Shown here one piece after another: positions 7,171 through 43,030 of a stretch of DNA of 64,000 nucleotides. The DNA lies in assembly GCA_002269645.1 (NCBI GenBank), contig NIVC01000909.1:1-64000 (forward strand). The letters run 5' to 3'. The DNA comes from Macrostomum lignano. Taxonomy: Eukaryota. Both the position numbers and the translations under genes were made by a program. Every line of letters begins with the position of its first letter. The first letter of the stretch is position 1. The notes under the pieces were generated by a model that had not been told where the DNA came from, ran no database searches, and saw nothing but the letters and a program-made list of their open reading frames with translations.

Positions 7171-10034
7171 AAAGTTATGCTATGAAGCTGGAATCGTGGA
7201 CGTCTAATCTGTACTTGACATTTTCATGCAGCTTAGGCCAAGCCAACGTGTACTTCACTCCGCCCTCTGTGCCTTGGAACAACATTCTGGTTCAAATTCG
7301 GTCTGACTCCGGCTTTCATGCTCGCAAAGATCTAGCGATGGATAATGTTAGTTTCAATGACAATACAATTTTGAATACTAGAATACATGCATATCATATG
7401 CTATTTTTAAACCTTTTGGGCATTTGTGATGCTGATGTATAGAAATTAGCTTGCACAGGGGCGAACCCAGGATAGTAGGGGCGCCCCTAATTTAAAAGGC
7501 TTTAGCATAGCAACCAAGGGCGTTAGCACCAGGGGCTTTAGCACCAGGAGCTTTAGCACCAGGGGCTTTAGCAACCAGGGGCTTTAGCACCAGGGGCTTT
7601 AGCACCAGAGGCTTTAGCACCAGAGGCTTTAGCACCAGAGGCTTTAGCACCAGGGGCTTTAGCACCAGGGGCTTTAGCACCAGGGGCTTTAGCACCAGGA
7701 GCTTTAGCACCAGGGGCTTTAGCACCAGGGGCTTTAGCACCAGGAGCTTTAGCACCAGGGGCTTTAGCAACCAGGGGCTTTAGCACCATGGGCTTTAGCA
7801 CCAGAGGCTTTAGCACCAGGGGCTTTAGAAACCAGGGGCTTTACCACTAGAGGGCTTTAGCAACCAGGGGGGGGGGCTTTAGCACTAGAGGGCTTTAGCA
7901 CTAAGGGCTTTAGCACTAGAGGGCTTTAGCACCAGCGGCTTTAGCACTAGAGGGCTTTAGCACCAGCGGCTTTAGCACCAGCGGCTTTGGCACCAGTGGC
8001 TTTACGAGCTAGCACCAGGGGCTTTAGCACCAGGGGCTTTAGCACCAGGGGCTTTAGCAACCAGGGGCTTTAGCACCAGGGGCTTTAGCACCAGAGGCTT
8101 TAGCACCAGGGGCTTTAGAAACCAGGGGCTTTACCACTAGAGGGCTTTAGCAACCAGGGGGGGGGCTTTAGCACTAGAGGGGGGGCTTTAGCACTAGAGG
8201 GCTTTAGCACTAAGGGCTTTAGCACTAGAGGGCTTTAGCACCAGCGGCTTTAGCACTAGAGGGCTTTAGCACCAGCGGCTTTAGCACCAGCGGCTTTGGC
8301 ACCAGTGGCTTTACGAGCTAGCACCAGGGGCTTTAGTACCTGGGGCTTAATTAGCACTAGGGGTATTTCGCACCTTATTAACGAACTGGTACGCACTGTA
8401 TGTAAATGTACAAATTTAGTTTTTTGCAATGCTACACTATCAGCTTGCCCCTGTCATGCAGGTAAAAAAGCTTGTCAACTCTTCATCGGGACTGGCCAGA
8501 GTAACTTTTACTGACAGCTCAGCCTTCAACTGTTTTCCAAAGCATCAAGGATACCAAGCCTTAGTAAGTGCTTTAATTTTTTTCTTTTTGTTGCTTCATA
8601 ATATAGTTCATAAATCACGCACTAATAACTAATTGCTTCGTTTCGTTATTATCCAGGTAAAGGTCCTGAGCTTCGACAGCACAAATCAGAACTTAGGTTG
8701 CACAAGATGCGAACCATTGACAACACCTCCCGGATGTCTTTACTATCGTGAGTAAATAAAAAGCAGATCGAGTTTAACAGCTAGAGATCTGTTGGTGGGC
8801 GCCCTGTCTCTTGGTGGGTGCCCTGGGTCTCTCAGGTGGGCGACCCAGTCTATCAGGTGGGCGCCCCTGTCTCTTGGTGGGCGCCCCTGTCTCTCAGGTG
8901 GGCGCCCCTGTCTCTCAGGTGAGCGCCCCTGTCTCTTGGTGGGTGCCCCTGTCTCTCAGGTGAGCGCCCATGTCTCTTAGTGGGCGCCCCTGTCTCTCAG
9001 GTGAGCGCCCATGTCTCTTGGTGGGCGCCTTTATAGTCTCCTAGGCTGGTGGATGCCGCGTCCAAGGGGTTTGATCTTCCGTCATTCTTTCAACAAGCTT
9101 GGTTACAGCGATCCTTCATTTAGTTTTTGGAGCGCAATTTTTAAGGCATTCCCCCTTCGCGTACAGCATTGCTGTATTTATAGCCTCTGGGAAATCCAAT
9201 TTGCGTTTGGGACTTAGGGTGCACCAAAAATTTAAGGGTATACTATGCAGCCAGTTACATGCATTGTGCGCAGATTCTATGGGTGCTACAAAATATCTTA
9301 GCGCCATAAAAAGACTTCATACTTAGGGGCCCTAAGCATCGAATTCAGCATTGGGCGCTGAATTCAGTGCTGCTATACATGTAGATGTAGGTTGCTGTCC
9401 TTGGGTATTAAGAATAGAGGGCTTCATGACTCCCAGAACCTCGAAAAAGCTGCTATTTCTTGTGCAACATTCCGACATTTTGCCAACGTACCCGGACGTG
9501 GTTATAGTAATTGGATATTTACATGCATACATTTGCATGTATCACACCGACGGATAGAGTACGTCATCCGTCGGCTGAACGTTAATAAATTACAGCAGCT
9601 AAACTACAGATCGCTATAGACGTCGCGAATGCTGTACAGGCCTTGCACATTGTACTGTACATGTACCTCACCCGCGGTCAACCCCTCAACTCCATACTCT
9701 CTACACAGCAAACGGAACAATGCTGCCTGACACGAACAACTGCAGACGGGCTTCACCCCCCGACCTGACTGGGCCTAGTCTAACGTCTGGTCCTAGCAGT
9801 CCTTCGGCTGAGGTCATCGACATCAACAGAGTCACTGTTACTATTAGTGTCACTGTGTTTGTTCTTCTACTGTTAGCATTTCTGTCAGTCGTTGCAGTCA
9901 GCCATTGCCGTGGTCGATCAGCCCAGGGTGACTTAGCATCATCTAACGATTCGCTAAATAGCGTTCGGGCTAGGTTTTTCACCCAGACACTGACTGCCGA
10001 GCACCACACAGACGTCGCTTGTGGTGCTCATTGA
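7171..10034 (+). CDS. Orphan single-pass membrane protein; exons 7171-7346, 8657-8747, 9709-10034; possible upstream exons 5963-6103 and 6394-?
   Basis: The three exons join in consistent phases (DN|VKV, phase 0; YY-P|NGT, phase 1). They encode a Cys-containing extracellular region, a Ser/Pro/Thr stalk and a hydrophobic segment (VTVTISVTVFVLLLLAFLSVVAV), followed by a short tail. A putative signal-peptide exon lies at 5963, but its link to 7171 could not be resolved. Confidence 0.55.
7500..8340. repeat. 15-bp minisatellite (GGGGCTTTAGCACCA)n with a ~300-bp higher-order duplication, intronic
   Basis: Directly visible. The variant blocks (agaaaccaggggctttaccactag; ttacgagctag) each recur twice. 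Confidence 0.95.
8792..9030. repeat. 21-bp minisatellite (GGTGGGCGCCCCTGTCTCTCA)n, intronic
   Basis: About 11 visible tandem units starting ~45 nt after the 8748 donor site. Confidence 0.9.
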
Positions 10035-12169: not shown

Positions 12170-13514
12170 TGTTGCTGCTTGTGTTGCTACTCAAAATGTA
12201 ACATGCATTGTAGGTGCCGGTGCAAATGGGAATGCAGTTATACCAATAGAAAGCAGAGGTGTAGCAAGACGAAAATATGGGGAGAAATTTGCTACATCAA
12301 TCTTCATTGGTTACAAAACTTTGTATCTATTCTGTTATGTTTTACCATTTAATCTTGAATCTTGATGCTATTTGTTCAACTCTATATGAACTTATGAACT
12401 ACAATACACTAAAGACCTAGTCTTGATTCCCAAAACCCAATCCTAAACCCAAGAAAAAGCTATTTCCAATCCTAATCCTGCCTGATTTCATCCTACCCGA
12501 CCTCTATATTATATTAAAGTTTCTTAAAAGATTTTTTACCTATAGGATTATAAATCTTATACAAATTAAGTCAAGAAAAAAGGACAAGATCTTATTAAAA
12601 TTCAAGATGCTATTAGTCTTTTAATTATCCTATTATCTAAATTTTGTTATTTGATTTTTGAAAATATTTATGCAAATATGTTTAACTAGGCCCAAGTAAC
12701 TGCCACAAAATATTATTTCCATAATATTAGGGGCCTATATGAAGGCATAAAGCCGAAAGAGAGTTGTATTTAGGCCTATTTAAAATAATATTTTTGGGGC
12801 CAAATATATTAAGGCCTAATTTAAGCCTATATTAGTTTTTAAGCTTACTGTTTGCAAAAAGCTATCTGCAATCTGCAATTAACAAAATAGTTCTATAGAA
12901 TAAATTTTCAATTGTTTAAAGCTTAGCTTAGCTTAGGCCTGATAACATTTAGTTAAATTTTGCTATTTGGACGTTAGGCCTACAAGTAGGCTAGGCTATC
13001 TATAAAAAGTTTAAGATTAAATTTTGAAAGTTTCAGATTCAGAAACAGAAAAAGACCTATATTTCAATTGTTACATTTAGATAAAGCTTTAGTAGGTGTA
13101 AGCCATAAGGCAAGGCCATGGGCATGGCATAGCTGGAAAAGCTTAACTTTTCAACTTAATAAAATGGAAATATGAATGATGGGAAATAAAATAAATTTTC
13201 TATGCCAAAGCCACCCTCCTGACTAAATTTAAGATTTAGGCCTAATTAATACATATTAATAGCTATAGACTGGTATAGTGTTACCTAAAAACTACAATCT
13301 TCATTTTCAAATGATGTACACATTAACATACACCAGGGTAATTCATTCATTCATTGGTAAGTTTTGGGCAATCAAAGGCTCTGCGTCTCAGCCCTTGGGG
13401 GAGGGCTCTTACGCAAATAGTTTTATTTAAAGAGTCCATTTAGAGCGAAACATACAGGGTACCTAAATTGATTATCTCGAACAGCTTTATAAAACTCTTG
13501 TGTTTGTTTTACAC

Positions 13515-15850
13515 GTATGAAACATTCGCCGACACTTATTCAGACACTTCTACAGACACTTTATTTTCTGTCGTACGGTTAGGAACAAGCATTAAATTTG
13601 TCTAGGACACTTCCTAATTCATATTTAATGAAATAAAGCAGTCCATGCATAGTTTTAATTTTGCAATTTTGTTTTTGTGCACTCGTTCCAGACTTTCAAA
13701 TTATGGCTTTTATCGCGTAGTGTGCGTGCATGCATCGTGTACAACGATTAGCTGCAGCGTGCTAAATAGTTCAATTAGGTATTAAAAGCGTACAAGGAGA
13801 CGAACCTGAAGTATTTGTACATTTTAGTTGAAGTTTAAAGTTCAAGCTTTTAGTGAATCATTGGAAAATAAAACTATCCGTTTTAAATCGTGCAACATAT
13901 TGTTTTGTCTCGGACATTTGTGACACTGTCACTTAGGGTTGCAAGGTTTTTTAAAAGAGAAACTGTTGCTTTTCCAATGCTGAAGTATTTGTGTTGTATG
14001 GATCAGGGTTTTTCGTCAAAATTTGGATGCATGTATACATCTAAACATATAAAAATGATCAAGGTTGAAGATTACCCTATGGTATAACTGTTTTCTCCAT
14101 TTTACTATTTCAAAGTGCCCACGTGAAGTTAGATTTAGCATGCCAGCCTTAAAAAATAAAAAAATCTACATAGTGTAGAATTGTATACTCCTTTATTTAG
14201 GGCTATATTATATTCCCAATATATTTGCTTAGATAAATCGAAAAGTATTTACTTTACTTGAAAAAAATAATGTTCACTACAAATATTTCAATGTAGAAAC
14301 CAGGAAACATAAACCTATCAAGTGTTATATAGAAATGAAGGATAAAGATATGGATAGAATATAATAAAGCCATTGTGGGCATTAAATATAAAACAAAAGA
14401 ATCACTTAAGGCAAAATTTGAAAAAAGTGAATTTTTGGCATGCTCCAAGAAAAAAGGCTTATAATTTGAAATATTTTTGCTTTTGTTTGACAAAAAATAT
14501 GTATAAGGCCTAGATTTATACTTTTGGGCAAGGTTTATTTTCTCTTAAAATTCTAATTGTAAATTTGCCAGTAAGCTTAAAAATTGTTGTAAGTTGAAGC
14601 TCAAATAAAATTAGTCTTAACTCCAATCTGACTTTCCAAAGTAAATCCCTAAATTATTTGTTACAATTGCTTTAAAAACTTGCCATTTCATTTATTCATT
14701 AATCATAATTTTGTTCTACAAACTGATACCTATAGAAGGTTTTTAGTTTTTAAGAAATCTGGTAACTAGTGTCAGAGAAATATGTTTATGTAGGTTTTAT
14801 ATATATATCAACCTTATATATAAAAAAGGTTGCACACTGAGATTTAAATACAGCTTCTAACATGTGTGTCCAGAGGTGAGATTGTGGCCAACTGCACACC
14901 AATAGCATACCAACTCTATACCAAATCCATACTGACATGCCAACTGTATACCAACTGTATACCAACTGTATACAAACACCATATCAACTCCATACCAACT
15001 GCATACCAACCCCATACCAATATGCCAACTGCATACCAACTCCATACCAATATGCCAACTGCATACCAACTCCATACCAACTGCATACCAACTCCATACC
15101 AACATGCCAACTGCATACCAACTCCATACCAACTATATTCCAACATGCCAACTGTATACCAACACCATACCAACTGTATGCCAACTGCATACCAACTCCA
15201 TACCAACTCCATACCAACATGCCAACTGCATACCAACTCCATACCAACTGCATGCCAACTGCATACCAACTACATACCAACATGCCAACTGCATGCCAAC
15301 TACATACCAACATGCCAACTGCATACCAACACCATACCAACTGCATGCCAACTGCATACCAACTCCATACCAACATGCCAACTGCATACCAACTCCATAC
15401 CAACTGCATACCAACTCCATACCAACATGCCAACTGCATACCAACTCCATACCAACATGCCAACTGCATACCAACACCATACCAACTGCATACCAACTCC
15501 ATACCAACATGCCAACTGCATACCAACTCCATACCAACTATATTCCAACATGCCAACTGTATACCAACACCATACCAACATGCCAACTGCATACCAACAC
15601 CATACCAACTGCATACCAACTGCATACCAACTCCATACCAACATGCCAACTGCATACCAACTCCATACCAACTGCATACCAACTCCATACCAACTATATT
15701 CCAATATGCCAACTGTATACCAACACCATACCAACTGTATGCCAACTGCATACCAACTCCATACCAACATGCCACTGCATACCAACTACATACCAACTAT
15801 ACCAACTGTATACCAACACCATACCAACTCCATACCAACTCCATACCAAG
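13515..15850 (+). repeat. Left TIR: ~1.4-kb unique AT-rich outer part plus inner (ATACCAACT[C/G]C / ATACCAACATGCCAACTGC)-type satellite
   Basis: Reverse complement of 21865-23913. The mirrored ORF-track entries (13890..14087 vs 23341..23538; 14254..14493 vs 22935..23174) are identical. Confidence 0.92.
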
Positions 15851-15990
15851 AATGTTAAATTGCGAGACTCGTAGGAACTTTTAGGTTCTCTTTTTGTACA
15901 ACTCTTGGGATACTTCTGCCATGTTGCCATCTTTCCTGACTCTTTTGATGACTAAAATCGCACTCTTCCATATTCCTGGACCAGTTATAA

Positions 15991-17037
15991 CAAGGCCCAC
16001 CGGATGCTGTTCTGCCTTGTGTAGGTGCGGTCCTACCATGCCCTTCTCTTCCTGTCATTGTGACGTTCAACAACAGCGATGAACTATCGATTCAGTCGGT
16101 TTGTCAGAGGCTTTGCGTTTGCACACGTTCATTTAATCATTCTAATATCCGTGTGCGAGACGGATTTCGTAGGTGCGGACGTGATCGAGTGTCTGTTGTC
16201 CAATTAATAACCGATCCTAGCAAGGTTGCATTTTTGCACGGTGTATATGGTTGTGGAAACAAAGGCCACCGTGGTAATGGCATTGCTTGGCTGCAGCGTG
16301 TAACTAAGCCACATCTGACGCAGTCAGTTGTCCTACGTCGAGAGGTTCCGGGTCACCATTTTCAAAGTTCAAAGCGACTGCGGAAGCAAGTTTTGCAGAG
16401 CTTTCGGCTCCTTATTTCTTCATGTGATGTGTCTGTTCTTCGTTCTCTGCTCGTTGTCTCGCGCGGCTTCAGTCAGCTACAATCGACTGTGCACCGTCGG
16501 CGTTTCATGCAGCGGCGATCACGCCCAACTGATGAGGAGCAGCGGCAGCACGCGCTGCAAGACGAGCAGCGGCATCTCGAGCTGGATGAACAGCGGCATC
16601 CGCAGATACAGGACGGCCAACGGCAACTCGCACTGCAGGAGCCGCGGCAGCTCGAGCTGGATGAACAGCGGCATCCGCAGATACAGGACGGCCAACGGCA
16701 ACTCGCACTGCAAGAGGAGCAGCGGCAGCTCGAGCTGGATGAACAGCGGCATCCGCAGATACAGGACGGCCAACGGCAACTCGCACTGCAAGAGGAGCAG
16801 CGGCAGCTCGAGCTGGATGAACAGCGGCATCCGCAGATACAGGACGGCCAACGGCAACTCGCACTGCCAGAGGAGCAGCGGCAGCTCGAGCTGGATGAAC
16901 AGCGGCAGTCCCAACAGTACGAGTGTCCCGCTCTTGGACCACTAAAACCAATGCGTCGGAGATCGCAGAGGCCCCAGAGATCTTTAAGGTCGGTCCAACC
17001 AGCGATGTCATTGCGCTCGCGAACGAGGCATGAGTAA
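15991..17037 (+). CDS. Unknown ORF inside the transposon with ~4 copies of a 78-bp (26-aa) E/Q/R-rich repeat
   Basis: The frame is open for ~350 codons from 15991, including ~170 non-repetitive codons. The repeat unit is QEEQRQLELDEQRHPQIQDGQRQLAL. There is no clear ATG and no recognised domain. Confidence 0.4.
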   Translation, partial: QGPPDAVLPCVGAVLPCPSLPVIVTFNNSDELSIQSVCQRLCVCTRSFNHSNIRVRDGFRRCGRDRVSVVQLITDPSKVAFLHGVYGCGNKGHRGNGIAWLQRVTKPHLTQSVVLRREVPGHHFQSSKRLRKQVLQSFRLLISSCDVSVLRSLLVVSRGFSQLQSTVHRRRFMQRRSRPTDEEQRQHALQDEQRHLELDEQRHPQIQDGQRQLALQEPRQLELDEQRHPQIQDGQRQLALQEEQRQLELDEQRHPQIQDGQRQLALQEEQRQLELDEQRHPQIQDGQRQLALPEEQRQLELDEQRQSQQYECPALGPLKPMRRRSQRPQRSLRSVQPAMSLRSRTRHE

Positions 17038-17884
17038 CAGACTAGGATGATGCGTGACGGAATATCGGATGCGTGTCTGTCCAGTTTGCGAGTTTGTTAT
17101 GCGAGTTTGCCAGCTTCTTTTGCGCGAAAATAAGAACGCTGGTATTCGAGCATTAAACAAAGTCATACCGTTCGTATAGCTTATTGGCTTATCTATTGTA
17201 CCATGCAACAATTTTCATTGCAACAAAGTATGTAGTTGAATGACTTCAGCGTAGTAGTAACTATGAGACAAGTATCTTATGTGGTTTTTAATCTATACTT
17301 CCTTGAACGATTAATTGTAGTTTATACTTATATTTGAACAGTTTCATTTCCTTTACCCGTATTAGTTGTCAGTCCTTGTGTTGAAATAAATTCTTTCGGA
17401 TAAATAAAGCAAAGGAATGTTTCATGGCACGTATTTTGTTGATTGGAACAATTTTTTCTTTTGTGACATTTATTGGCCTAAGTGATAAGTGACAGGTGTA
17501 CAGGTTTTACAGGCCAAAAACAATTACGATTATACTCAAATGGAGAGTATTTAGCTGCAAGAAAAGAGTATATAGTTGACACTATAAGTTTTAGAACTCA
17601 CGTTGTCCAAACGGTTTACTAACGGCGTTTAGTCCCAGCTTTTAGCGCATACAGAAAAATAGAGAATTAAAATGGCGGTAAACTATAAAATGCAAATCCG
17701 TACATGTATATATGTAGACCTTTTCAACACAGTTAAAAGTTTTTGTTATAAATACATTACACAGCACTATCATCAGTTATGAATTTATACTTTCAACGGC
17801 ATGAGACCATTACAAACACGAATAAACTCAAGAAAATAAGTAAACCGTCCACATTATGTTAATAACACGGAGATCACCAGCACG

Positions 17885-19359
17885 TTAGCCGTAAAAAAGA
17901 GCGCAGCAGTTTCGCTTCACGTCATTGAATGCCGCTGACAAAGATACTTTTCGTACAGTTAAATCACTGACACAGTAGCTAGTGCGGCCACAGAATACGT
18001 ATGCAATATAGTGACCACTATTCACGCGACTACCAATGTGAACGATGGCTGCACGAAGCTTGTAGCTTCTGCCACTCAAAGTAAGCTTCATTTCGATGGG
18101 TACAACTTTAGTGTTCTTCTCGAATAGTACAGTTTGTCCCTTTCTGCGCTTGACAGAGACTCGGCTAATTCCCATGCATATGTGCTCCGACGTTGTTGCA
18201 AGTGTTTGTGCATAGCTGCACCCCCCGACGTCGCAAGTCGGACAACGGATGTCGGTGTGGTCTTGAGTAGAAAACAGTGACTGTCTAATGAGTGCCGGGA
18301 AATCAAGCGAGTCGTCGTGATCAGGAATTGATAAACGTAGAATAGTTGCCGTGTCTCTAGGTAGCAGTCGTGTCACTTTGAAACAGGCGGAACAACTCAA
18401 AGTTGTAGAAATCTACGAAATAAAAAAGATGGATAGGAACAGTACTCATGGTGCAACTGTGAAGACCAACACACAGTGGAAGCGCGATTGAAAGGTATTC
18501 TTTGCCTTCCAGCAAAGTATATACTGTCTTCGAAGGTAACTTACAAATAAATTTAGATTCAGGATGCAGGCTTAAATCACTTTACTAAAACGCATTTAAA
18601 TAGTCATAAACTTAATAAACCGTTCACCCTTACCTCGCAGCTGAATCGCAGTTTGAGCTCAGAAAGAAACAGCATTCCGGTCAGAAACTCTAAGGCACAG
18701 TTTTGTGCCATAGGATCCATATGAAATGCTTTACTGCACCACTAAAACGCGGCTGAATGCAGCAACAGAACGTCTTTGCCTGTCATTAGGCAGTTAAGGA
18801 ACAGCGCAAGTGGTGAATCTGCATCACACGATAGTGCGCTCGTTAATGTTGCAACCAAGCATTGACTGGCGGCATTGAAAGCACAATACGTGCCCGTCGG
18901 ATTCGGTAGCCCCTCTGGCGACCGTGGCGATAGTGCAGGAAATGACACTGCAGTGTCGGCGCGTCCTAATAAAATTGGCGGTTAGGAACGAATTTACCAT
19001 CAAAATGTCCCAGTGAACAGCCCAGTCACATCCATTTAACAACAAAAAATGGCGCCTCGACGTAAGCAAAAGAAACGAAACTTAAAAGTACAAATACTTA
19101 TGGAAAGCAACATGTTGAATGCTAATTCATGGAAATTAGTAAAACTTAAAAGGGCATAATCGGTGACACGAAAAGCAAAAAAATGATAGAATCATAAACT
19201 TTAGATCTCTAATCAGAGAACAATCACGTAACAGAAACGTGCATCATACGGAACATGTTGGATTGTGCAATATAAATACCTGTGCCAGTCGAGACGGAGG
19301 AGGCCTACAAAGAGAGTTGATTGATAAGGTTGCACCTTACCCACAAGTTGCTGAGACAT
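17885..19359 (-). CDS. Ubiquitin-specific protease (USP, peptidase C19) cargo gene; exons 19359-19341 (tentative), 18965-18634, 18412-17885; in-frame TAG at 18744-18742
   Basis: Cys box GLPNPTGTYCAFNAASQCL, Q-box-like AQNCALEFL, two CxxC pairs (CSAC, CPTC), His box YKLRAAIVHIGSRVNSGHYIAYV, Asp motif SDLTVRKV and C-terminal ALFY. The intron GAG|gtaagg...tttcgtag|ATT is phase 0. Confidence 0.85.
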
Positions 19360-19919
19360 GGCACATACATTACTACGACAGATCTAGTGGGAGACGCAAA
19401 TTGTGGCGGAGTGAGTGTACGGCGCATACACAATACGTAAACCAATACAAGGGTTGACTGAAGGTATTTCTAAACTGAAAAAATGCAATTTCATCACTCA
19501 CAATTTGCTCATCTGGTAGGCTGTGACAGGTGGTATTCTGTGCTGTTGGTGCAGGTGAAATGCCCGAGCGAGACCCACTTGCAGCAGGCGCAGCTAGTGT
19601 ACAGGTCGTGGGTGCAATAGCAGGCCGAACCTGGACAATGACGGGCTGGCTGCCCGAGCGAGACCCACTTGCAGCAGGCGCAGCTAGAGTACAGGTCGTG
19701 GGTGCAATAGCAGGCCGAACCTGGACAATGACGGGCTGGCTGCCCAAGCGAGACCCACTTGCAGCAGGCGCAGCTAGAGTACAGGTCGTGGGTGCAACGG
19801 CTGGCGGAATTGATAATGCCGATTGAATGAAGCTGGTTCTTCGTCTTTTTGAGGCTCCTGACCTTTTTCAGGGATCTCCAGGTGGGTTTAACGGAGCATC
19901 AAAGCCACATTTGCGTCCT

Positions 19920-21701
19920 CTAGCACGCTTTGGGGGGGCGAATTGGATGTTGCTCGTGCTGCAACCGCTTCAGTTGCAGTTTTACGGTTGTTAGTTGCGC
20001 ACGGACAAATCTTGGTAACCTGAGCCGAGAACTTGGAGAAGGCAGTGCTTCGCTTTTGCACCAGCTGAACCATGATTCAACAGCGGCGTTGGTCACGTGT
20101 GCGCTACGATTTCCTCCAAACACTGCCACACTCCAAAGAGGAAACAGTGGCATCCACTTTCGCAATACAACCTGAACAGCCTGAGGGTAGAAAAGATTGT
20201 TCAGCACGCCATTGCCATCGCTTGCTGTCACTTCGCTTGTCAAATCGTTGAAGTACTTCGCAAAAGGTGATGAGGCTCGTAGTCCAGTCTCCAATTCAGC
20301 CAATGCGACGTCTTCTTGCACTGCATTTGAGACATTAGCAGAATCTTCAGCCACTTGGTTTTCATCAGGAATCTCCAACGAACTGAAGTCGAACCTACCA
20401 TGTAGAATTTGTAAAGCCTTCAAAGTGGCAGGATTTACCCGCCTGGAGGTAAACACCTCGACCATTGCCTTCCAAACAGCTTGGGCGCAACGCAAAGTTT
20501 TCGACGTCACTAATAGTGCAAAAGAGAGCATGAACTCGCGATAAGTAACCTTATCGATTTTATCTGGTGACTTCAAAGTCCTGGCAACAGCGCGCAGCAA
20601 ATGCGAGCTACAGATAAACACAACAGGAGATTCAGGTGGCTTCAGATCAGCACTCCGAAGTCGATTGTACTGTACACGCAGGTAGTCTGTAACACAGGTC
20701 GTGCATGCGGCTCGGAGAATACCATGAATGAAAACCCAGCTAAAGTCAGACACGTAGATTTGCGGACCTTTCTTGGGTAGTTCCCACAGTCCTATGTTGC
20801 AGTGACGAGCGAAATCTGCTAAAAAATGCATTAGCCAACTGGACACATTTTCCGAGCGCGTGACCTCCATGATGCTTTCTGATACAGCTGTTCTCTTTAT
20901 ATCCGGGGTTGCAACAACAGCACTGCACAGAAGTACAGTGCTCGGCACGTTCTGGGTCTGTCGCACAATTCCGCCGGTGGCGTCTAAGTGGAGAGGAGCA
21001 AGCTGATTGCCTTTCAGCACGTCGCGAAGCAAATCCAACTGCATGGAGGTATGGAGAATCACACTAACTGGTGCAACGTCAATCTTTTGGATATAGCCGC
21101 TAATGACTCCATCCTCGTTTATAGTCAACTTCCAGTCTTTCATTTGGAGTCTTAAATCTCTTATGTCGTCTGGAGACTTGTCGTCGGCAGCTTTTGTCCG
21201 ACTAACAGTTGTACGGACAGCAGATAGAGAGCATGCTTCGCTACCAAACAGCTCGATTGCTTTCACATAGATCTGCGTTGGCTTGGCAGCAGGGTTGGTG
21301 GCCTGAGATAAAACAAAGTTACGGCACTCTTGTGAACCTCGTTGCCACAGATAGCGATAAGAGGGACAACTTGATGGAACATCATGCCCCGAGTGCTCTG
21401 AGATTCTTTGTAGCGTCAGTGTAGAGGACTGCCCATCAGTCGGCGCCTTGTTTAAGGTGACGACGAATGCCATACTGCAACCAGAGCCTTCGGCACAGAC
21501 TAGGCGCATCCAAAGAAAACTGCAGTCCTTCCTATGGCGCTTAAATGCACGCAGTCTAACCTTATTAACTGAGAACTGACAATACTCACCATGCTGTCTT
21601 AACAGTGGATAAATGACTTGATCGAACCAAGAAGGCTTAAGTTTACAAGTTCTTGTATCAAAGTGATTCACGAAGAGATTAGTTGATATGCATGATTCCA
21701 C
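19920..21701 (-). CDS. Mutator/MULE-family DDE transposase (NOF-like), >=593 aa; 5' and 3' ends disrupted at homopolymer runs
   Basis: N-terminal C..C..H..H zinc-finger-like region (VCAEGSGC..SEHSGH), D1 LHLDATG, D2 YVSDFSW, CxxH (CSSH) and a distal E (AAVESWF), which together form the MULE catalytic signature. Confidence 0.88.
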   Translation of the reverse strand: MESCISTNLFVNHFDTRTCKLKPSWFDQVIYPLLRQHGEYCQFSVNKVRLRAFKRHRKDCSFLWMRLVCAEGSGCSMAFVVTLNKAPTDGQSSTLTLQRISEHSGHDVPSSCPSYRYLWQRGSQECRNFVLSQATNPAAKPTQIYVKAIELFGSEACSLSAVRTTVSRTKAADDKSPDDIRDLRLQMKDWKLTINEDGVISGYIQKIDVAPVSVILHTSMQLDLLRDVLKGNQLAPLHLDATGGIVRQTQNVPSTVLLCSAVVATPDIKRTAVSESIMEVTRSENVSSWLMHFLADFARHCNIGLWELPKKGPQIYVSDFSWVFIHGILRAACTTCVTDYLRVQYNRLRSADLKPPESPVVFICSSHLLRAVARTLKSPDKIDKVTYREFMLSFALLVTSKTLRCAQAVWKAMVEVFTSRRVNPATLKALQILHGRFDFSSLEIPDENQVAEDSANVSNAVQEDVALAELETGLRASSPFAKYFNDLTSEVTASDGNGVLNNLFYPQAVQVVLRKWMPLFPLWSVAVFGGNRSAHVTNAAVESWFSWCKSEALPSPSSRLRLPRFVRAQLTTVKLQLKRLQHEQHPIRPPKAC

Positions 21702-21864
21702 AAAAAACCTCCAGCAGAAAAAACTTGTGCACCAGCAGCACCTGAATGGTCACCGCTAATGGCTTCAGAAGTGTCGTTCACACTTTTCTTCGCTGCCATG
21801 CAAAGAAGCCTGAAACATGAAACAATGGTATGAATTTGCATGTTTTCGTTTAGTGTGGCATTGT

Positions 21865-23913
21865 CATGTTGGTATGTAGTTAGTATGTTGGTATGGAGTT
21901 GGTATGCAGTTGGCATGCAGTTGGTATGGAGTTGGTATGCAGTTGGCATGTTGGTATGGAGTTGGTATGGAGTTGGTATGCAGTTGGTATGGAGTTGGTA
22001 TGCAGTTGGCATGTTGGTATGGAGTTGGCATGCAGTTGGTATGGAGTTGGTATGGTGTTGGTATGCAGTTGGCATGTTGGTATGCAGTTGGTATGCAGTT
22101 GGTATGGAGTTGGTATGGTGTTACTATGCAGTTGGCATGTTGGTATGTAGTTGGTATGCAGTTGGCATGCAGTTGGTATGGAGTTGGTATGCAGTTGGCA
22201 TGTTGGTATGGAGTTGGTATGCAGTTGGTATGGAGTTGGTATGCAGTTGGCATGTTGGTATGGAGTTGGTATGCAGTTGGCATACAGTTGGTATGGTGTT
22301 GGTATACAGTTGGCATGTTGGAATATAGTTGGTATGGAGTTGGTATGCAGTTGGCATGTTGGTATGCAGTTGGCATGTTGGTATGGAGTTGGTATGCAAT
22401 TGGCATATTGGTATGGGGTTGGTATGCAGTTGGTATGGAGTTGATATGGTGTTTGTATACAGTTGGTATATAGTTGGTATACAGTTGGCATGTCAGTATA
22501 GATTTGGTATAGAGTTGGTATGCTATTGGTGTGCAGTTGGCCACAATCTCACCTCTGGACACACATGTTAGAAGCTGTATTTAAATCTCAGTGTGCAACC
22601 TTTTTTATATATAAGGTTGATATATATATAAAACCTACATAAACATATTTCTCTGACACTAGTTACCAGATTTCTTAAAAACTAAAAACCTTCTATAGGT
22701 ATCAGTTTGTAGAACAAAATTATGATTAATGAATAAATGAAATGGCAAGTTTTTAAAGCAATTGTAACAAATAATTTAGGGATTTACTTTGGAAAGTCAG
22801 ATTGGAGTTAAGACTAATTTTATTTGAGCTTCAACTTACAACAATTTTTAAGCTTACTGGCAAATTTACAATTAGAATTTTAAGAGAAAATAAACCTTGC
22901 CCAAAAGTATAAATCTAGGCCTTATACATATTTTTTGTCAAACAAAAGCAAAAATATTTCAAATTATAAGCCTTTTTTCTTGGAGCATGCCAAAAATTCA
23001 CTTTTTTCAAATTTTGCCTTAAGTGATTCTTTTGTTTTATATTTAATGCCCACAATGGCTTTATTATATTCTATCCATATCTTTATCCTTCATTTCTATA
23101 TAACACTTGATAGGTTTATGTTTCCTGGTTTCTACATTGAAATATTTGTAGTGAACATTATTTTTTTCAAGTAAAGTAAATACTTTTCGATTTATCTAAG
23201 CAAATATATTGGGAATATAATATAGCCCTAAATAAAGGAGTATACAATTCTACACTATGTAGATTTTTTTATTTTTTAAGGCTGGCATGCTAAATCTAAC
23301 TTCACGTGGGCACTTTGAAATAGTAAAATGGAGAAAACAGTTATACCATAGGGTAATCTTCAACCTTGATCATTTTTATATGTTTAGATGTATACATGCA
23401 TCCAAATTTTGACGAAAAACCCTGATCCATACAACACAAATACTTCAGCATTGGAAAAGCAACAGTTTCTCTTTTAAAAAACCTTGCAACCCTAAGTGAC
23501 AGTGTCACAAATGTCCGAGACAAAACAATATGTTGCACGATTTAAAACGGATAGTTTTATTTTCCAATGATTCACTAAAAGCTTGAACTTTTAACTTCAA
23601 CTAAAATGTACAAATACTTCAGGTTCGTCTCCTTGTACGCTTTTAATACCTAATTGAACTATTTAGCACGCTGCAGCTAATCGTTGTACACGATGCATGC
23701 ACGCACACTACGCGATAAAAGCCATAATTTGAAAGTCTGGAACGAGTGCACAAAAACAAAATTGCAAAATTAAAACTATGCATGGACTGCTTTATTTCAT
23801 TAAATATGAATTAGGAAGTGTCCTAGACAAATTTAATGCTTGTTCCTAACCGTACGACAGAAAATAAAGTGTCTGTAGAAGTGTCTGAATAAGTGTCGGC
23901 GAATGTTTCATAC
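21865..23913 (-). repeat. Right TIR: shorter inner satellite plus ~1.4-kb unique outer part
   Basis: Reverse complement of the left TIR. The satellite tract is ~0.65 kb here vs ~0.95 kb on the left. Confidence 0.92.
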
Positions 23914-24860
23914 ATTTGTTTTACATGTCTTGGAAGTTATATTTTAACAAATGTTTGCACATAAAGTAAAAACAACTTTACGTTTTTATTTTTATCTTAA
24001 AGAAAGTAAAAGCATATTTTTTGTACCTAACTAAAAATATTTTTTTTAGTAGCATAAACACACTATTTTGTTTTTCCTTGTGGTTCAAATATTGAAAAAG
24101 TAATAATTATTTTCTTGGAATTTAATAACGCTTTTTGTTTCTGTGTTTAATTAAAGCAATCTTAATCAAAATGTTAGCACGTGTATTAGTTTTATTCTTT
24201 GCTGTAAAAAATGAAATTAAATCATCATTATGCTTAGATGTAAAGTTAGAACAACAATTAAAATCAAATTATCTGGCACCAAACAATAACTGAGACCCCT
24301 CTAGAGTCTAGATTCTTGATTTTAATTCTGGAATTAAAATGACACTTTACAATGACACTAAACAATAACTGAGACCCCTCTAGAGTAGTCTAGATTCTGT
24401 AATTTCAATATTGACATTGTTTCAAAGGCTTTTCTACAATTCAGCTTACCTATTTTTACCTGGATGCAGGCAAATTCAGTGACAGAAATTGATTTCAGAC
24501 AAATTTGGCAGAAGCAAATTAAGCAAAAATATATTTTCTAGGCTAGGCAAATTACTAATTAGATAGCCTAGCAATGAGCAACCCAGCAATTCTATATAGG
24601 CCTAGGACTAACCTAAATTTAATTTTTAAAGCAATTTTTAAAACTCCTTAAATGCTCATGAAAGTGTGAAACTTAATAAAAAATTTGATTCTCCAAAAAT
24701 TTGCTTTGCATTTCTGTACAATTTCTTACTATCTAGATTGCCTAGTAGGGCCTATTTCAAGTTTATGTAAGACTAGGCCTAGGCCTAAGAGTTTAGTGGC
24801 TAGTTTTAATCTTAAGGCATCTCTTTGCCATAGAAAATCTAAATGTATTATATATATATA

Positions 24861-29905: not shown

Positions 29906-30715
29906 CAGGGTTGCACGCCCACTAAAGAATCAGGAAAGAGGGTTGCACGCCCACTAAAGAATCAGGAAAGCGGGTTGCACGCCCACTAAAGAATCAGGAT
30001 AGAGGGTTGCACGCCCACTAAAGAATCAGGATAGAGGGTTGCATGCCCACTAAAGAATCAGGAAAGAGGGTTGCACGCCCACTAAAGAATCAGGAAAGAG
30101 GGTTGCACGCCCACTAAAGAATCAGAAAAGAGGGTTGCACGCTCACTAAAGAATCGAGATATAGGGTTGCACGCCCACTAAAGAATCGGGAAAGAGGGTT
30201 GCACGCCCACTAAAGAATCGGGAAAGAGGGTTGCACGCCCACTAAAGAATCGGGAAAGAGGGTTGCACGCCCACTAAAGAATCAGGAAAGAGGGTTGCAT
30301 GCCCACTAAAGAATCGGGATAGAGGGTTGCACGCCGACTAAAGAATCGGGAAAGAGGGTTGCACGCCCACTAAAGAATCGGGAAAGAGGGTTGCACGCCC
30401 ACTAAAGAATCGGGATAGAGGGTTGCACGCCGACTAAAGAATCGGGATAGAGGGTTGCACGCCGACTAAAGAATCGGGATAGAGGGTTGCACGCCCACTA
30501 AAGAATCGGGATAGAGGGTTGCACGCCCACTAAAGAATCGGGAAAGAGGGTTGCACGCCCACTAAAGAATCGGAAAAGAGGGTTGCACGCCCACTAAAGA
30601 ATCGGGTTAGAGGGTTGCACGCCCACTTAGAATCAGCAGAGAGGGTTGCACGCCCACTTAAGAATCAGCAGAGAGGGTTGCACGCTCACTAAAAAATCAG
30701 GATAGAGGGTTGCAA
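29906..30715. repeat. 32-bp minisatellite immediately upstream of GSTK-B
   Basis: Unit AGAGGGTTGCACGCCCACTAAAGAATCGGGAA, ~25 copies, ending ~65 nt before the ATG. Confidence 0.95.
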
Positions 30716-32734: not shown

Positions 32735-33014
32735 GGCTACCGGTTCCTTTAATTCAATTTTTTTGCTTTTAGCGTTTAAATAAATAATTTTTAATGTACA
32801 ACGCTCTAGCCTGTACAAAAAATGGATTTCCTAATATTTGAAACTTTTTATACTCTTTGAAAATTGAATTTTCAATAAACAAAATTTTGCCTTATAAGCG
32901 GCTTCCATTCATGTATACAAGACTTTATTAAATGACTTAATTTTTTTCCATTCTGTATTTTTATTACTTAGTCAAGTAGTAAGGTCAAGACTGAGACAGA
33001 CAGGGCAGCCACTG

Positions 33015-36000: not shown

Positions 36001-36085
36001 AGACAGGGCAGACACAGTTGCAGACAGGGCAGACACAGTCGCAGACAGGGCAGACACAGTTGCAGACAGGGCAGACACAGTCGCA
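33015..36085. repeat. ~3.07-kb 21-bp tandem array (CAGACAGGGCAGACACAGT[C/T]G)n, ~146 units
   Basis: Directly visible and highly homogeneous. The consensus unit has no stop codon in any frame. Confidence 0.97.
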
Positions 36086-36175
36086 GTCATCATAAAGAAG
36101 CCGAAGACCCAGTAGCTAAACGGTCCACTTCAGTCCCATTGAAGCAACACTCGCCCGCTATTCCTGTCTCGCCAG

Positions 36176-42388: not shown

Positions 42389-42389
<1 letters not shown>

Positions 42390-42439
<50 letters not shown>

Positions 42440-42440
42440 T

Positions 42441-42531
<91 letters not shown>

Positions 42532-42586
42532 GGCTGGCTGTCTGTCTGTCTGCCTGCCTGTCTGTCTGTCTGTCTGTCTTTCTGCC

Positions 42587-42685
<99 letters not shown>

Positions 42686-42730
42686 CTGTCTGTCTGTCCG
42701 TCTGTCTGGCTGGCTGTCTGTCTGTCTGCC

Positions 42731-42763
<33 letters not shown>

Positions 42764-42764
42764 T

Positions 42765-42795
<31 letters not shown>

Positions 42796-42796
42796 T

Positions 42797-42831
<35 letters not shown>

Positions 42832-42838
42832 TTCTGCC

Positions 42839-42879
<41 letters not shown>

Positions 42880-42894
42880 GCCTGTCTTTCTGCC

Positions 42895-42935
<41 letters not shown>

Positions 42936-42972
42936 TTCTCTGTCTGTCTTAGTGTCTGTCTGTCTGTCTTAG

Positions 42973-43003
<31 letters not shown>

Positions 43004-43030
43004 GTTTGTCTGGCTGTCTGTCTCTTTCTG
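42390..43030. repeat. (CTGT)n microsatellite
   Basis: Directly visible. Confidence 0.97.

What the first reader, a model, noticed from the sequence alone, without database searches (positions are those of the whole stretch)
13514..23914. Mutator/Foldback transposon that carries its own ubiquitin-specific protease (USP/C19 deubiquitinase)
Between two ~2-kb inverted repeats with an 11-bp TSD lie a MULE DDE transposase and, directly downstream on the same strand, a spliced USP with Cys box, Q box, zinc-finger CxxC pairs, His box and Asp motif. Established: some MULEs carry Ulp1/C48 SUMO proteases, and Drosophila FB-NOF has long repeat-containing TIRs. A C19 deubiquitinase as MULE cargo is a different protease class, and I do not recall it as a characterised system. 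Inference: the DUB could stabilise the transposase or strip ubiquitin marks (for example H2Aub/H2Bub) used in host silencing, giving the element a built-in counter-defence.
Basis: partly seen in the sequence, partly recalled or inferred. Interest (0 to 1): 0.9.

Follow-up and report, generated by a model that had tools for sequence, protein, structure and literature searches.

The report
Flatworm Mutator-type transposon encoding a deubiquitinase
A young, multi-copy Mutator-type "jumping gene" of the flatworm Macrostomum lignano carries a conserved ubiquitin-specific protease where its closest relatives carry a SUMO-type protease, which suggests these transposons need some ubiquitin-like deconjugating enzyme; the copy in this window is itself broken.

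Summary
Window 13513-23915 is one copy of a 10-13.5 kb foldback-type DNA transposon of Macrostomum lignano. It has about 2.2-kb inverted ends: 1556 nt are perfectly complementary, followed by arrays of an 11-bp unit. The target-site duplication is 9 bp, not 11; other copies have 8-9 bp. At least 13 distinct insertions exist, all 98-99.9% identical.

The transposase has no Pfam hit. Its AlphaFold model (pLDDT 88) matches the IS256-family transposase ISCth4 and a WRKY DNA-binding domain, so it belongs to the Mutator superfamily in the broad sense and looks Rehavkus-like.

The downstream USP passes the Pfam UCH threshold. It lies inside the ends of every full-length copy. Between transposon lineages it evolves at dN/dS of about 0.15-0.2. 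The closest transposase relatives in the same genome (40% identity) carry a Ulp1/C48 protease plus a PHD finger in that position. USPs that are 50-58% identical sit next to two other, very different transposases. A clam homologue has transposase and USP fused in one exon.

The window copy is defective: TAG in the USP, TGA and two homopolymer frameshifts in the transposase. A subfamily with a frameshifted USP still spread. How the USP is expressed, what its substrate is and what it does remain inferred. I class it as a new variant of a known kind.

The parts
13504..13512 (.). Left target-site duplication, TTGTTTTAC (9 bp)
   Evidence: The termini were defined by aligning the ends of 11 copies.
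13513..15849 (.). Left long inverted repeat: an AT-rich unique part (perfect complement of the right arm over 13515-15070), then an array of an 11-bp unit (CCAACTSCATA, about 92 units) at 14888-15849
   Evidence: The long open frames inside the array are artefacts of the repeat.
16543..16907 (.). 78-bp minisatellite (4.7 units) between the USP and the left arm. It is open in all six frames, including the + strand frame 15991-17037, and has no Pfam family above threshold.
17885..18412 (-). Last coding exon of the USP (175 codons plus TAA): CSAC (18394), CPTC (18244), His box SGHY (18019), Asp VSDL (17971), C-terminus NCCALFYG
   Evidence: (UCH 4.7e-8)
18413..18633 (-). USP intron, phase 0 (donor GAG|gtaagg, acceptor tcgtag|ATT). 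The same intron position is found in two other USP lineages.
18634..18965 (-). USP exon holding the Cys box (catalytic Cys codon 18885-18883) and the Q box. It starts at acceptor ttattag|GA (phase 1) and has no in-frame ATG before the catalytic Cys. In this copy a nonsense TAG sits at 18744-18742 (CAG in intact copies).
19341..19359 (-). Candidate first USP mini-exon, ATGTCTCAGCAACTTGTGG|gtaagg (phase 1). It is in frame with the acceptor at 18965 and would give MSQQLVG-RADTAV...
   Evidence: This is a prediction only. A parallel MSAD|gtaaga mini-exon exists in the C1176 USP lineage.
19561..19830 (-). 90-bp repeats that encode the 30-aa repeat linker at the C-terminus of the transposase. Copy number varies between copies (open frames of 795-1005 aa). 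Each unit holds a phase-1 GT (CAA|gtgggt; exon ends at 19759, 19669 and 19579) that would join in frame to the USP exon.
   Evidence: (P0151)
19376..21799 (-). Transposase gene. The ATG is at 21799. It encodes a WRKY-like zinc finger (CAEGSGC...HSGH, residue 85 onward of the 609-aa frame) and a DDE core: D256 (20984), D335 (20747), C380-x2-H383 (20612-20601) and N554/E558 (20078). An NLS-like KRARGRK...KRRR follows, then the repeat linker. In this copy it is broken by a -1 change at 21707-21702, a +1 change at 19938-19932 and a TGA at 19870-19868.
21868..23915 (.). Right long inverted repeat: an array of the 11-bp unit (about 64 units, 21868-22540), then the unique part. The terminus reads ...CATACAT, with G>A at 23914 relative to the family consensus ...CATACGT.
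23916..23924 (.). Right target-site duplication, TTGTTTTAC

Best explanation

What is shown. The family has foldback-type ends and makes 8-9 bp target duplications. Its transposase combines an N-terminal WRKY-type zinc-finger DNA-binding domain with an IS256/Mutator-type DDE core carrying the C-x2-H motif. That places it in the Mutator superfamily in the broad sense. It sits in a Rehavkus-like clade whose members usually carry a C-terminal Ulp1/C48 protease with or without a PHD finger. In this family that accessory position is taken by a divergent but complete USP/C19 catalytic domain. The USP lies on the same strand about 0.5 kb downstream. It is present in every full-length copy, is kept under purifying selection between transposon lineages, and is shared as a module with at least two other Mutator-type lineages of the same genome.

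What is inferred.
- The transposase binds the terminal and 11-bp subterminal repeats and excises and reinserts the element.
- The USP is co-transcribed with the transposase.
- The USP is translated either from its own mini-exon ATG (19359) or as a transposase-linker-USP fusion that uses the phase-1 donors in the 90-bp repeats. I lean slightly towards the mini-exon. It could reach translation after spliced-leader processing of a polycistronic transcript, but I did not examine the spliced-leader sequence.
- The USP removes ubiquitin or a ubiquitin-like modifier at the transposition site or from the transposase. This would be the job that the SUMO-type protease does in sister elements. The outcome would be either a more stable transposase and better repair, or erasure of Ub/SUMO-dependent silencing marks.

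Intact copies (C262, C139) are the likely sources of protein. The window copy and the whole USP-frameshifted subfamily B are probably mobilised in trans.
For: Structure and mobility.
- A perfect 1556-nt inverted repeat plus arrays of the 11-bp unit.
- Sixteen TIR-bounded sequences, which represent at least 13 different insertion sites with different 8-9 bp duplications.
- Copies are 98.2-99.95% identical.
- Roughly 400-bp MITEs share the terminal 90 bp.

Transposase class.
- 629 homologues at E<=1e-3; D256, D335, C380, H383, N554 and E558 are (nearly) invariant.
- The AF2 model has pLDDT 88.1.
- The best PDB matches are the ISCth4 (IS256-family) transposase at E 3.9e-4, prob 1.00, and then WRKY DNA-binding domains at prob 0.99. 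No hAT, P or other transposase appears among the 50 matches listed.
- Of 50 long homologues, 10 have a PHD finger, 7 C48, 1 OTU and 1 UCH at E<=1e-3; weaker matches to each protease family also occur.

USP.
- Pfam UCH at 38.3 bits, above the cut-off of 23.9.
- A profile search of the PDB returns almost only USPs.
- The Cys, His and Asp residues and both CxxC pairs are conserved in three lineages.
- dN/dS is 0.14-0.23 between lineages and about 0.8-1 among copies within two of the other USP lineages, which is the pattern expected of a gene that serves the transposon.

Replacement and modularity.
- The closest transposase relatives (about 39-40% identity; C1607, C130, C1803) have C48 exons (E 4.5e-6 after joining, C1607/C130) and a PHD finger (1.9e-6, C1803) in the same place.
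- USPs that are 50-58% identical lie downstream of a transposase that is 22% identical (C1176/C1753) and of an unalignable canonical MULE (C2687; PF10551 at E 1e-3, CWNH, NQSESVN, SWIM-like).

Fusion precedent and co-transcription.
- Mercenaria XP_053374366.1 has the C-terminal half of the transposase, the linker and the USP Cys box in one exon.
- The Cys-box exon has no in-frame ATG in any of the three lineages.
- GenBank model P0001 joins 19502 to 18965. The Mlig_3_7 annotation was derived from transcript assemblies (PMC5730564).
Against: - No RNA, protein or activity data were available here. The only annotated junction (P0001) puts the USP out of frame with the transposase.
- The in-frame fusion model (P0151) and the mini-exon are predictions only.
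- A search of long proteins with the hypothetical fusion found nothing.
- All subfamily-B copies share a 1-nt deletion in USP exon 2, yet they occupy at least 5 loci. The USP is therefore dispensable in cis.
- Transposase differences between subfamilies A and B (4 synonymous, 20 non-synonymous) show no purifying selection either, so B may simply be non-autonomous.
- Pfam MULE does not match the transposase, and a profile comparison with a canonical MULE of the same genome is not significant.
- Foldseek TM-scores are low (0.25-0.34).
- The USP is so divergent (GTYCAF instead of GNTCY/W) that its specificity for ubiquitin is unproven.
Confidence: 0.72

Rival explanations
1. The USP is a passenger: a host gene fragment captured Pack-MULE-style. 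It is carried along passively and does nothing for the element.
For: MULEs are known for gene capture (PMC6446971). Subfamily B spread with a frameshifted USP. The window copy carries a nonsense codon.
Against: The USP is a complete catalytic domain, not a fragment. It is present in all full-length copies. It is conserved with all catalytic motifs and the same intron position in three transposon lineages, at dN/dS 0.14-0.23. It occupies exactly the slot that a C48 protease fills in sister elements. USP fusions to homologous transposases exist in a clam.
Confidence: 0.1
2. The USP is made only as the C-terminal domain of the transposase. A single transposase-linker-USP polyprotein would be produced by splicing from a phase-1 donor in the 90-bp repeats to the acceptor at 18965. 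Alternative use of the GTGAGT donor at 19502 would give a transposase-only isoform.
For: In the clade, the protease is normally part of the transposase polypeptide. Examples are C48 at the C-terminus of P0050, P0098, P0078, P0030 and P0081. The C1803 transposase frame runs straight into the first C48 segment. The Mercenaria transposase and USP Cys box share one exon. UniProt model P0151 makes exactly this in-frame join. The Cys-box exon has no ATG.
Against: The repeat donor CAA|GTGGGT is weaker than the two alternatives. P0151 reads through the next intron, so it looks ab initio. A mini-exon with a strong donor gives an independent in-frame start in two lineages. No long fused protein was found.
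Confidence: 0.35
3. The element is not Mutator-type. Its 8-bp duplications and C-x2-H motif would instead place it in the hAT or P superfamily. (Galileo, a P element, also has foldback-like ends.)
For: Seven of the copies examined have 8-bp duplications. There is no Pfam MULE hit. Galileo shows that long foldback ends occur outside the MULEs (PMC3688188, listed).
Against: The best structural matches are the IS256-family transposase and WRKY domains. Hermes and P-element transposase structures are not among the 50 matches listed. There is no THAP or hAT dimerisation domain in Pfam. Homologues carry PHD fingers and minisatellites, as described for Rehavkus. IS256 and MULEs also make 8-9 bp duplications (my own knowledge).
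Confidence: 0.05

Closest known systems
Rehavkus / Mutator-like elements (MULE superfamily in the broad sense; Repbase, Yuan & Wessler 2011, Dupeyron et al. 2019)
   Same: A DDE transposase with the C/D-x2-H motif and an IS256-like fold. Long TIRs and 8-9 bp target duplications. A minisatellite between the coding region and one TIR. Homologues, and the sister families in the same genome, carry a PHD finger.
   Different: No PHD finger was found in this family. The TIRs are far longer (about 2.2 kb against 26-400 bp). Rehavkus has been recorded only in arthropods and annelids. The element encodes a USP. No direct comparison with a Repbase Rehavkus sequence was possible.
Ulp1/C48-carrying MULEs (Arabidopsis KI-MULEs/Kaonashi, melon, rice and maize MULEs; hydra and lancelet MuDR)
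   Same: A Mutator-type element that encodes a cysteine isopeptidase of the ubiquitin-like system next to, or fused with, the transposase. Sister families in this genome have exactly that arrangement.
   Different: The protease here has the C19/USP fold, which is unrelated to C48. It presumably acts on ubiquitin rather than SUMO.
OTU-carrying transposons (MuDR-6_HM of Hydra, Ginger1, animal Helitrons)
   Same: A deubiquitinase-type cysteine protease appended to a transposition protein. OTU also occurs in remote homologues of this transposase: P0038 clearly (8.4e-8) and P0096 weakly (E 0.0049, below threshold).
   Different: A different protease fold and a different transposase family (for Ginger1 and Helitron).
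Trichomonas vaginalis XP_001314237.1 (transposase_11 + Peptidase C19), noted by Bao, Kapitonov & Jurka 2010
   Same: It is the only published transposase-C19 association I could find.
   Different: An IS5/PIF-type transposase in a protist. It is a single protein, with no described element, copy-number analysis or selection analysis.
Drosophila Foldback (FB/NOF) and Galileo
   Same: Very long inverted ends built partly of short tandem subrepeats (Galileo abstract).
   Different: Galileo is a P-superfamily element with a THAP domain. No relationship to FB/NOF proteins was tested. Neither is known to encode a protease.

Membership tests
Mutator superfamily (MULE in the broad sense, including Rehavkus) | DDE transposase with an RNase-H fold related to prokaryotic IS256 | tested here: met
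   The AF2 model (pLDDT 88.1) has the ISCth4 (IS256-family) transposase as its top five Foldseek PDB hits (E 3.9e-4 to 1.5e-2, prob 0.85-1.00). TM-scores are low (0.20-0.34).
Mutator superfamily (MULE in the broad sense, including Rehavkus) | C/D-x2-H motif between the second Asp and the Glu, with conserved D, D and E | tested here: met
   D256, D335, C380-x2-H383, N554 and E558 are invariant or >=90% conserved in 92 homologues.
Mutator superfamily (MULE in the broad sense, including Rehavkus) | Match to the Pfam MULE domain PF10551 | tested here: not met
   No Pfam family matched at E<=10, either for the window frame or for the intact C262 protein. None of 50 homologues matched at E<=1e-3. 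hhalign against a canonical MULE of the same genome gave probability 0.3.
Mutator superfamily (MULE in the broad sense, including Rehavkus) | Target-site duplication of 8-11 bp, and TIRs | tested here: met
   The duplications are 8 bp in seven copies and 9 bp in two, including the window. The TIRs are about 2.2 kb.
Mutator superfamily (MULE in the broad sense, including Rehavkus) | N-terminal WRKY/FLYWCH-type zinc-finger DNA-binding domain | tested here: met
   A four-stranded sheet spans residues 59-117 and carries C-x5-C...H-x2-H. Foldseek matches WRKY18 and RRS1 WRKY domains at prob 0.92-0.99.
Rehavkus | PHD finger in the transposase | tested here: not met
   No PHD finger was found in the transposase or in the frames downstream of the USP that were scanned. 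A PHD finger is present in the sister family (1.9e-6) and in 10 of 50 homologues.
Rehavkus | Minisatellite before the 3' TIR; 9-bp TSD | tested here: met
   A 78-bp minisatellite lies at 16543-16907, and 90-bp coding repeats lie in the transposase C-terminus. The TSD is 8-9 bp. The defining description comes from PMC6446971.
Rehavkus | Sequence similarity to Repbase Rehavkus transposases | not testable with these tools
USP / peptidase C19 (Pfam UCH PF00443) | Profile match above the curated threshold | tested here: met
   38.3 bits against 23.9, E 1.5e-9, for the spliced product of intact copies. The paralogue exons score 32-40 bits. 37 of 38 PDB profile hits are USPs.
USP / peptidase C19 (Pfam UCH PF00443) | Catalytic Cys (Cys box), His (His box) and Asp/Asn, plus the zinc-ribbon CxxC pairs | tested here: met
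   All are invariant in three lineages. In the window copy they are present, but a TAG at 18744-18742 separates the Cys box from the rest of the domain.
USP / peptidase C19 (Pfam UCH PF00443) | Deubiquitinating activity | not testable with these tools
   This needs a biochemical assay.
Pack-MULE (non-autonomous MULE carrying captured host fragments) | No transposase; the cargo is a gene fragment under no selection | tested here: not met
   Intact transposase frames of 795-1005 aa exist in several copies. The USP domain is complete, with dN/dS 0.14-0.23 between lineages.
Ulp1-MULE (KI-MULE type) | Peptidase C48 domain encoded by the element | tested here: not met
   This family has no C48 domain. 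Sister families do: 4.5e-6, 27.1 bits against a cut-off of 20.7.

The most novel reading that the evidence does not exclude
In one clade of Mutator/Rehavkus-type transposases the accessory slot has been filled repeatedly by three unrelated ubiquitin-like isopeptidase folds (Ulp1/C48, OTU and USP/C19). The USP module also moves between unrelated transposon lineages within one genome. That pattern would mean that deconjugating ubiquitin or SUMO at the transposition site is a general, selected requirement of these elements. The likeliest purpose is to counter Ub/SUMO-dependent chromatin silencing (for example piRNA-guided silencing in flatworm neoblasts) or to steer repair of the excision break. 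The divergent USP might even have shifted to SUMO, as USPL1 has.
Probability: 0.35. Interest if true: 0.8.

Novelty: new variant of a known kind. Interest (0 to 1): 0.6.

Why it matters
Cysteine proteases of the ubiquitin and SUMO systems have been seen on transposons for about twenty years (Ulp1 on MULEs, OTU on Helitrons and Ginger), and their role remains unknown.

This family offers a natural experiment. Homologous transposases in one genome carry either a SUMO-type protease or a ubiquitin-type protease in the same position. The USP module is shared among transposons that are otherwise very different. Both intact copies and USP-dead copies are only 0.1-1% diverged. M. lignano is also the one flatworm with stable transgenesis and an active PIWI/piRNA system in its stem cells.

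The question of what these proteases do for a transposon therefore becomes directly testable here. The possibilities include stabilising the transposase, steering repair and opposing silencing.

On the practical side, the family should be added to repeat libraries. Current annotation calls the pieces "hypothetical protein" and "SPARK domain-containing protein".

Tried and rejected
- Pfam on the transposase, both the window frame and the intact C262 version: no family even at E<=10.
- hhalign of the family profile against a canonical MULE from the same genome: not significant.
- Word-indexed searches of 5.8 billion proteins with the transposase, the USP and a hypothetical fusion. They found only two M. 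lignano models for the first two queries and nothing for the fusion.
- phmmer and a 3-sequence HMM of the USP against the 150 transposase homologues. Neither detected the USP-bearing ones, and neither did regex motif scans. These homologues were found only by Pfam scanning.
- phmmer of the USP against the PDB: nothing. A profile search worked.
- Exact look-ups of P0001 and P0151 for genomic context: not on record.
I stitched copies from search loci instead.
- I rejected the 11-bp TSD.
- I rejected the long open frames inside the 11-bp and 78-bp arrays as genes.
- I rejected the homopolymer indels as reliable evidence of decay. The same insertion, assembled four times (C2602, C2024, C2417, C4515), differs by such indels.
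- I rejected a 30-nt intron around the TAG, because intact copies simply read CAG there.
- I rejected the A-versus-B transposase dN/dS as evidence about function: 24 differences are too few.

Full report
1. What is in the sequence.

The two arms 13515-15070 and 22358-23913 are 1556 nt long and 100% complementary. Inward of them, both arms continue as degenerate arrays of an 11-bp unit (CCAACTSCATA and its complement). The arrays span 14888-15849 (about 92 units) and 21868-22540 (about 64 units). Each inverted end is therefore about 2.2 kb and has a foldback-type build. The long open frames inside the arrays are artefacts of the repeat.

Between the arms, on the minus strand, lie three features. 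The first is a 609-aa stop-to-stop frame (19920-21749). The second is a block of 90-bp repeats (19561-19830). The third is a two-exon USP (18965-18634 and 18412-17888) with a Cys box, Q box, CSAC and CPTC pairs, His box and Asp. A 78-bp minisatellite (16543-16907) lies between the USP and the left arm.

2. Organism and copies.

The only close database protein is [quoted passage not shown]. The window's assembly has 764 Mb in 5269 contigs. This matches the published Mlig_3_7 assembly (764 Mb, 5270 scaffolds; PMC5730564).

A search with the terminal 400 nt finds 16 sequences bounded by inverted ends, at 97-98% identity and 7.3-13.5 kb long. It also finds roughly 400-bp MITE-like pairs that share only the terminal 90 nt.

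Aligning the ends of eleven copies gives the true termini, ACGTATGAAAC...GTTTCATACGT, with unrelated flanks. The window element is therefore 13513-23915. Its right terminus has a G>A change at 23914. Its target duplication is the 9-bp TTGTTTTAC, not 11 bp. Seven of the other copies examined have 8-bp duplications and C139 has 9 bp.

Four contigs (C2602, C2024, C2417 and C4515) hold the same insertion. This fits the known redundancy of the assembly. At least 13 distinct insertion sites remain.

Copies fall into two subfamilies. Subfamily A comprises C262, C139, C741, C2605, C31 and the window, at 99.7-99.95% identity. Subfamily B comprises C1154, C1822, C2017, C1117 and the four-fold locus, at 99.0-99.95%. 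A and B differ by about 1.2-1.8%. The family is very young.

3. State of the window copy.

Compared with C262, C139 and C2605, the window copy has four defects:
- a 1-nt loss in a T7 run (21707-21702);
- a 1-nt gain in a C6 run (19938-19932);
- TGG>TGA at 19870-19868 in the transposase;
- CAG>TAG at 18744-18742 in the USP, between the Cys box and the Q box.

Homopolymer indels are unreliable in this PacBio-based assembly, because the four assemblies of one locus differ by such indels. The two stop codons are substitutions. C262 (transposase frame 1005 aa) and C139 (885 aa) have both genes intact. Frame lengths of 795, 885, 915 and 1005 aa differ by multiples of the 30-aa repeat.

4. The transposase.

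Pfam gives no hit at all. An exhaustive HMMER search of 1.84 billion representative proteins gives 629 homologues at E<=1e-3. In an alignment of 92 of them, D256, D335, C380-x2-H383, N554 and E558 are invariant or nearly so.

The AlphaFold model built on that alignment is confident (mean pLDDT 88.1, pTM 0.76). Its best PDB matches are the ISCth4 transposase, a member of the IS256 family (E 3.9e-4, prob 1.00). After that come WRKY DNA-binding domains (prob 0.99), which match the N-terminal four-stranded sheet carrying C-x5-C...H-x2-H. No other transposase appears among the 50 matches listed. IS256 is the prokaryotic relative of Mutator, and WRKY-type fingers are typical N-terminal domains of MULE transposases; both statements come from my own knowledge.

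Among 50 long homologues, 10 carry a PHD finger, 7 a Ulp1/C48 domain, 2 a YqaJ nuclease, 1 an OTU domain and 1 a UCH domain at E<=1e-3. Weaker matches to the protease families also occur. A PHD finger, a minisatellite before the 3' TIR and 9-bp duplications are the published description of Rehavkus, which is grouped with the MULEs (PMC6446971).

I therefore place the transposase in the Mutator superfamily in the broad sense and call it Rehavkus-like. Three caveats apply. The Pfam MULE test fails. A profile comparison with a canonical MULE is not significant. No Repbase sequence could be compared.

5. The USP.

Joining the two exons of an intact copy gives 286 aa. The product matches Pfam UCH at E 1.5e-9, 38.3 bits against the curated 23.9. 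A three-lineage profile search of the PDB returns 38 chains, of which 37 are USPs (USP30, 15, 35, 36, 12, 46 and others), all at marginal E-values. It is thus a real USP domain, but a very divergent one with no evident closest paralogue.

The USP lies inside the inverted ends, on the transposase strand, in every full-length copy. The two shorter elements are deletion or rearrangement derivatives that lack most of it: C1843 (7.3 kb) and C1967 (8.0 kb, with an inverted duplicate of the transposase 5' end).

6. Relatives in the same genome.

Three loci have transposases about 39-40% identical to the window's (C1607, C130, C1803). In the same downstream position, C1607 and C130 have exons that together match Peptidase_C48 at E 4.5e-6, 27.1 bits against 20.7. 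In C1803 the joined exons gave no Pfam C48 hit. It does show the catalytic-Cys motif QQDGSSCG and weak tblastn matches to C48-bearing homologues, and it has a PHD finger at E 1.9e-6. In C1803 the transposase frame runs directly into a segment that reads like the start of the C48 domain.

Conversely, USPs that are 50-58% identical to the window's, with the same intron position, lie downstream of two other kinds of transposase. One is a transposase only 22% identical (C1176/C1753), which still matches the family profile at E 7e-32. The other is a canonical MULE that cannot be aligned with the window's (C2687). That MULE shows PF10551 at E 1e-3, CWNH, NQSESVN and a SWIM-like CSC...CAH.

The history of the USP is therefore discordant with that of the transposases. 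The USP behaves as a module that replaced C48 in this family and was exchanged among lineages.

Nei-Gojobori estimates for USP exon 2 give dN/dS of 0.14-0.23 between lineages (dS is saturated, so the values are approximate). Among copies within two of the other lineages the ratio is about 0.8-1; one small comparison gave 0.15. Purifying selection between lineages with near-neutral decay of individual copies is the signature of a gene that serves the transposon.

7. Relatives elsewhere.

Two remote homologues carry a USP C-terminal to the transposase. P0036 is RefSeq XP_053374366.1 of the clam Mercenaria mercenaria (UCH E 8.9e-6; Cys box GNTCW, Q box, two CxxC pairs). P0047 comes from an ENA assembly and retains only the Cys box.

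In the clam locus one uninterrupted exon (L087:14978-16033) encodes the C-terminal half of the transposase, a Lys-rich linker and the USP Cys box. Transposase-USP fusion is therefore real in another phylum. The clam USP and the flatworm USP are too different to say whether they share a single origin.

8. How the USP is expressed (inferred).

In all three flatworm lineages, the exon with the catalytic Cys has no in-frame ATG between the upstream stop and the Cys. It must therefore be an internal exon.

The GenBank model P0001 lies on contig C741, and the Mlig_3_7 annotation was built from transcript assemblies. P0001 joins the strong donor after 19502 to the acceptor at 18965. This puts transposase and USP on one transcript but out of frame. 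Two in-frame routes exist.
- (a) A 19-nt mini-exon, ATGTCTCAGCAACTTGTGG|gtaagg (19359-19341, phase 1), would give MSQQLVG-RADTAV.... It has a parallel MSAD|gtaaga mini-exon in the C1176 lineage.
- (b) Phase-1 donors CAA|gtgggt are present in every 90-bp repeat. The UniProt model P0151 uses one to make a transposase-repeat-USP fusion.

All of these signals are present in all copies. M. lignano processes many polycistronic transcripts by spliced-leader trans-splicing, which would suit route (a). Route (b) is the norm in the wider clade. I cannot decide between them. I lean slightly towards (a).

9. Function (inferred).

What is shown is a mobile Mutator-type element that keeps a USP under selection, in the slot where its relatives keep a SUMO-type or OTU-type protease. 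My best reading is that a Ub/Ubl-deconjugating activity helps these elements. It might protect the transposase, steer repair of the break, or remove Ub/SUMO marks used in silencing.

Bao, Kapitonov and Jurka proposed a link between transposition and the ubiquitin/SUMO pathways in 2010. They also noted one transposase+Peptidase-C19 protein in Trichomonas (PMC2836005).

One result argues against a strict requirement. All subfamily-B copies share a 1-nt deletion in USP exon 2, yet they occupy at least 5 loci. However, the B transposase also shows no sign of constraint relative to A (4 synonymous and 20 non-synonymous differences). B may simply be mobilised in trans by A.

10. Novelty and verdict.

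I found no paper describing a Mutator-type element with a C19 protease, and none on Macrostomum Mutator elements. Repbase and Dfam could not be searched.

The general phenomenon of Ub/Ubl cysteine proteases on DNA transposons is known. What is new here:
- the USP fold on a Mutator/Rehavkus-type element;
- its replacement of C48 in sister families of one genome;
- its exchange among unrelated lineages;
- its recurrence in a mollusc.

I class this as a new variant of a known kind, of moderate to high interest. It sits in an organism where it can be tested. The window copy itself is a dead member of the family.

Noticed in passing
G000 contigs C459:237600-237993, C867:213773-214190, C1237:145034-145440, C255:743008-743414; also C1293, C34, C260: Roughly 400-bp elements with inverted ends that match only the terminal 90 nt of this transposon, at 86-92% identity. 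They are probably MITE derivatives mobilised by the same transposase.
   Followed up: partly
G000 C2602:145785-157116, C2024:854-12185, C2417:1-7775, C4515:34787-43542: The same insertion, with the same flanks, is assembled four times and differs by 0-1% and by homopolymer indels. This shows the redundancy of the assembly (duplicated chromosomes or haplotigs) and gives a yardstick for its indel error.
   Followed up: yes
window 32997-36086; also 7508-8313, 27587-28074, 29907-30714, 40614-41696, 42389-43023, 47792-48433, 57375-58166, 60439-61049: The window is packed with minisatellites. The largest is a 21-bp unit repeated 147 times over 3.1 kb, with extreme purine/pyrimidine strand asymmetry. 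All six frames are open across it.
   Followed up: no
window 51885-53414 (- strand): A 509-aa open frame with an NHL-repeat match (E 1.1e-6). Other long frames (2356-3627, 49229-50839, 61738-63183) have no Pfam family.
   Followed up: no
window 15991-17037 (+ strand): A 348-aa open frame opposite to the two genes. It runs through the 78-bp minisatellite (Gln/Glu-rich repeats). It is also open in C262, but so are the other frames. It has no Pfam family above threshold, and I treat it as a repeat artefact.
   Followed up: partly
L087 (Mercenaria mercenaria CM038769.1, 79097-133104): The clam transposase-USP gene model spans 34 kb. A 4-kb interruption splits the transposase, and the USP is divided into small exons. 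The next called gene carries a Peptidase_C48 domain, which suggests a cluster of related elements.
   Followed up: partly
proteins P0032 and P0063 (Logan assemblies): Some remote homologues combine the transposase with a PHD finger, a YqaJ/viral alkaline-exonuclease-type nuclease and a C48 protease in one protein of about 1400 aa. This is an unusually rich accessory set for a cut-and-paste transposase.
   Followed up: no
G000 C1967:106046-114077: An 8.0-kb copy that keeps the transposase (with a TGA). It carries an inverted duplicate of the first 594 nt of the transposase gene in place of USP exon 2. This kind of rearrangement is expected of foldback-type elements.
   Followed up: partly
G000 C3789:95730, C1023:36671, C1564:43113, C1798:132475, C1223:123438: A further set of near-identical frames of about 173 aa, only 30-31% identical to the USP last exon and present on several contigs. 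They may be yet another repeated (transposon-borne?) USP lineage.
   Followed up: no
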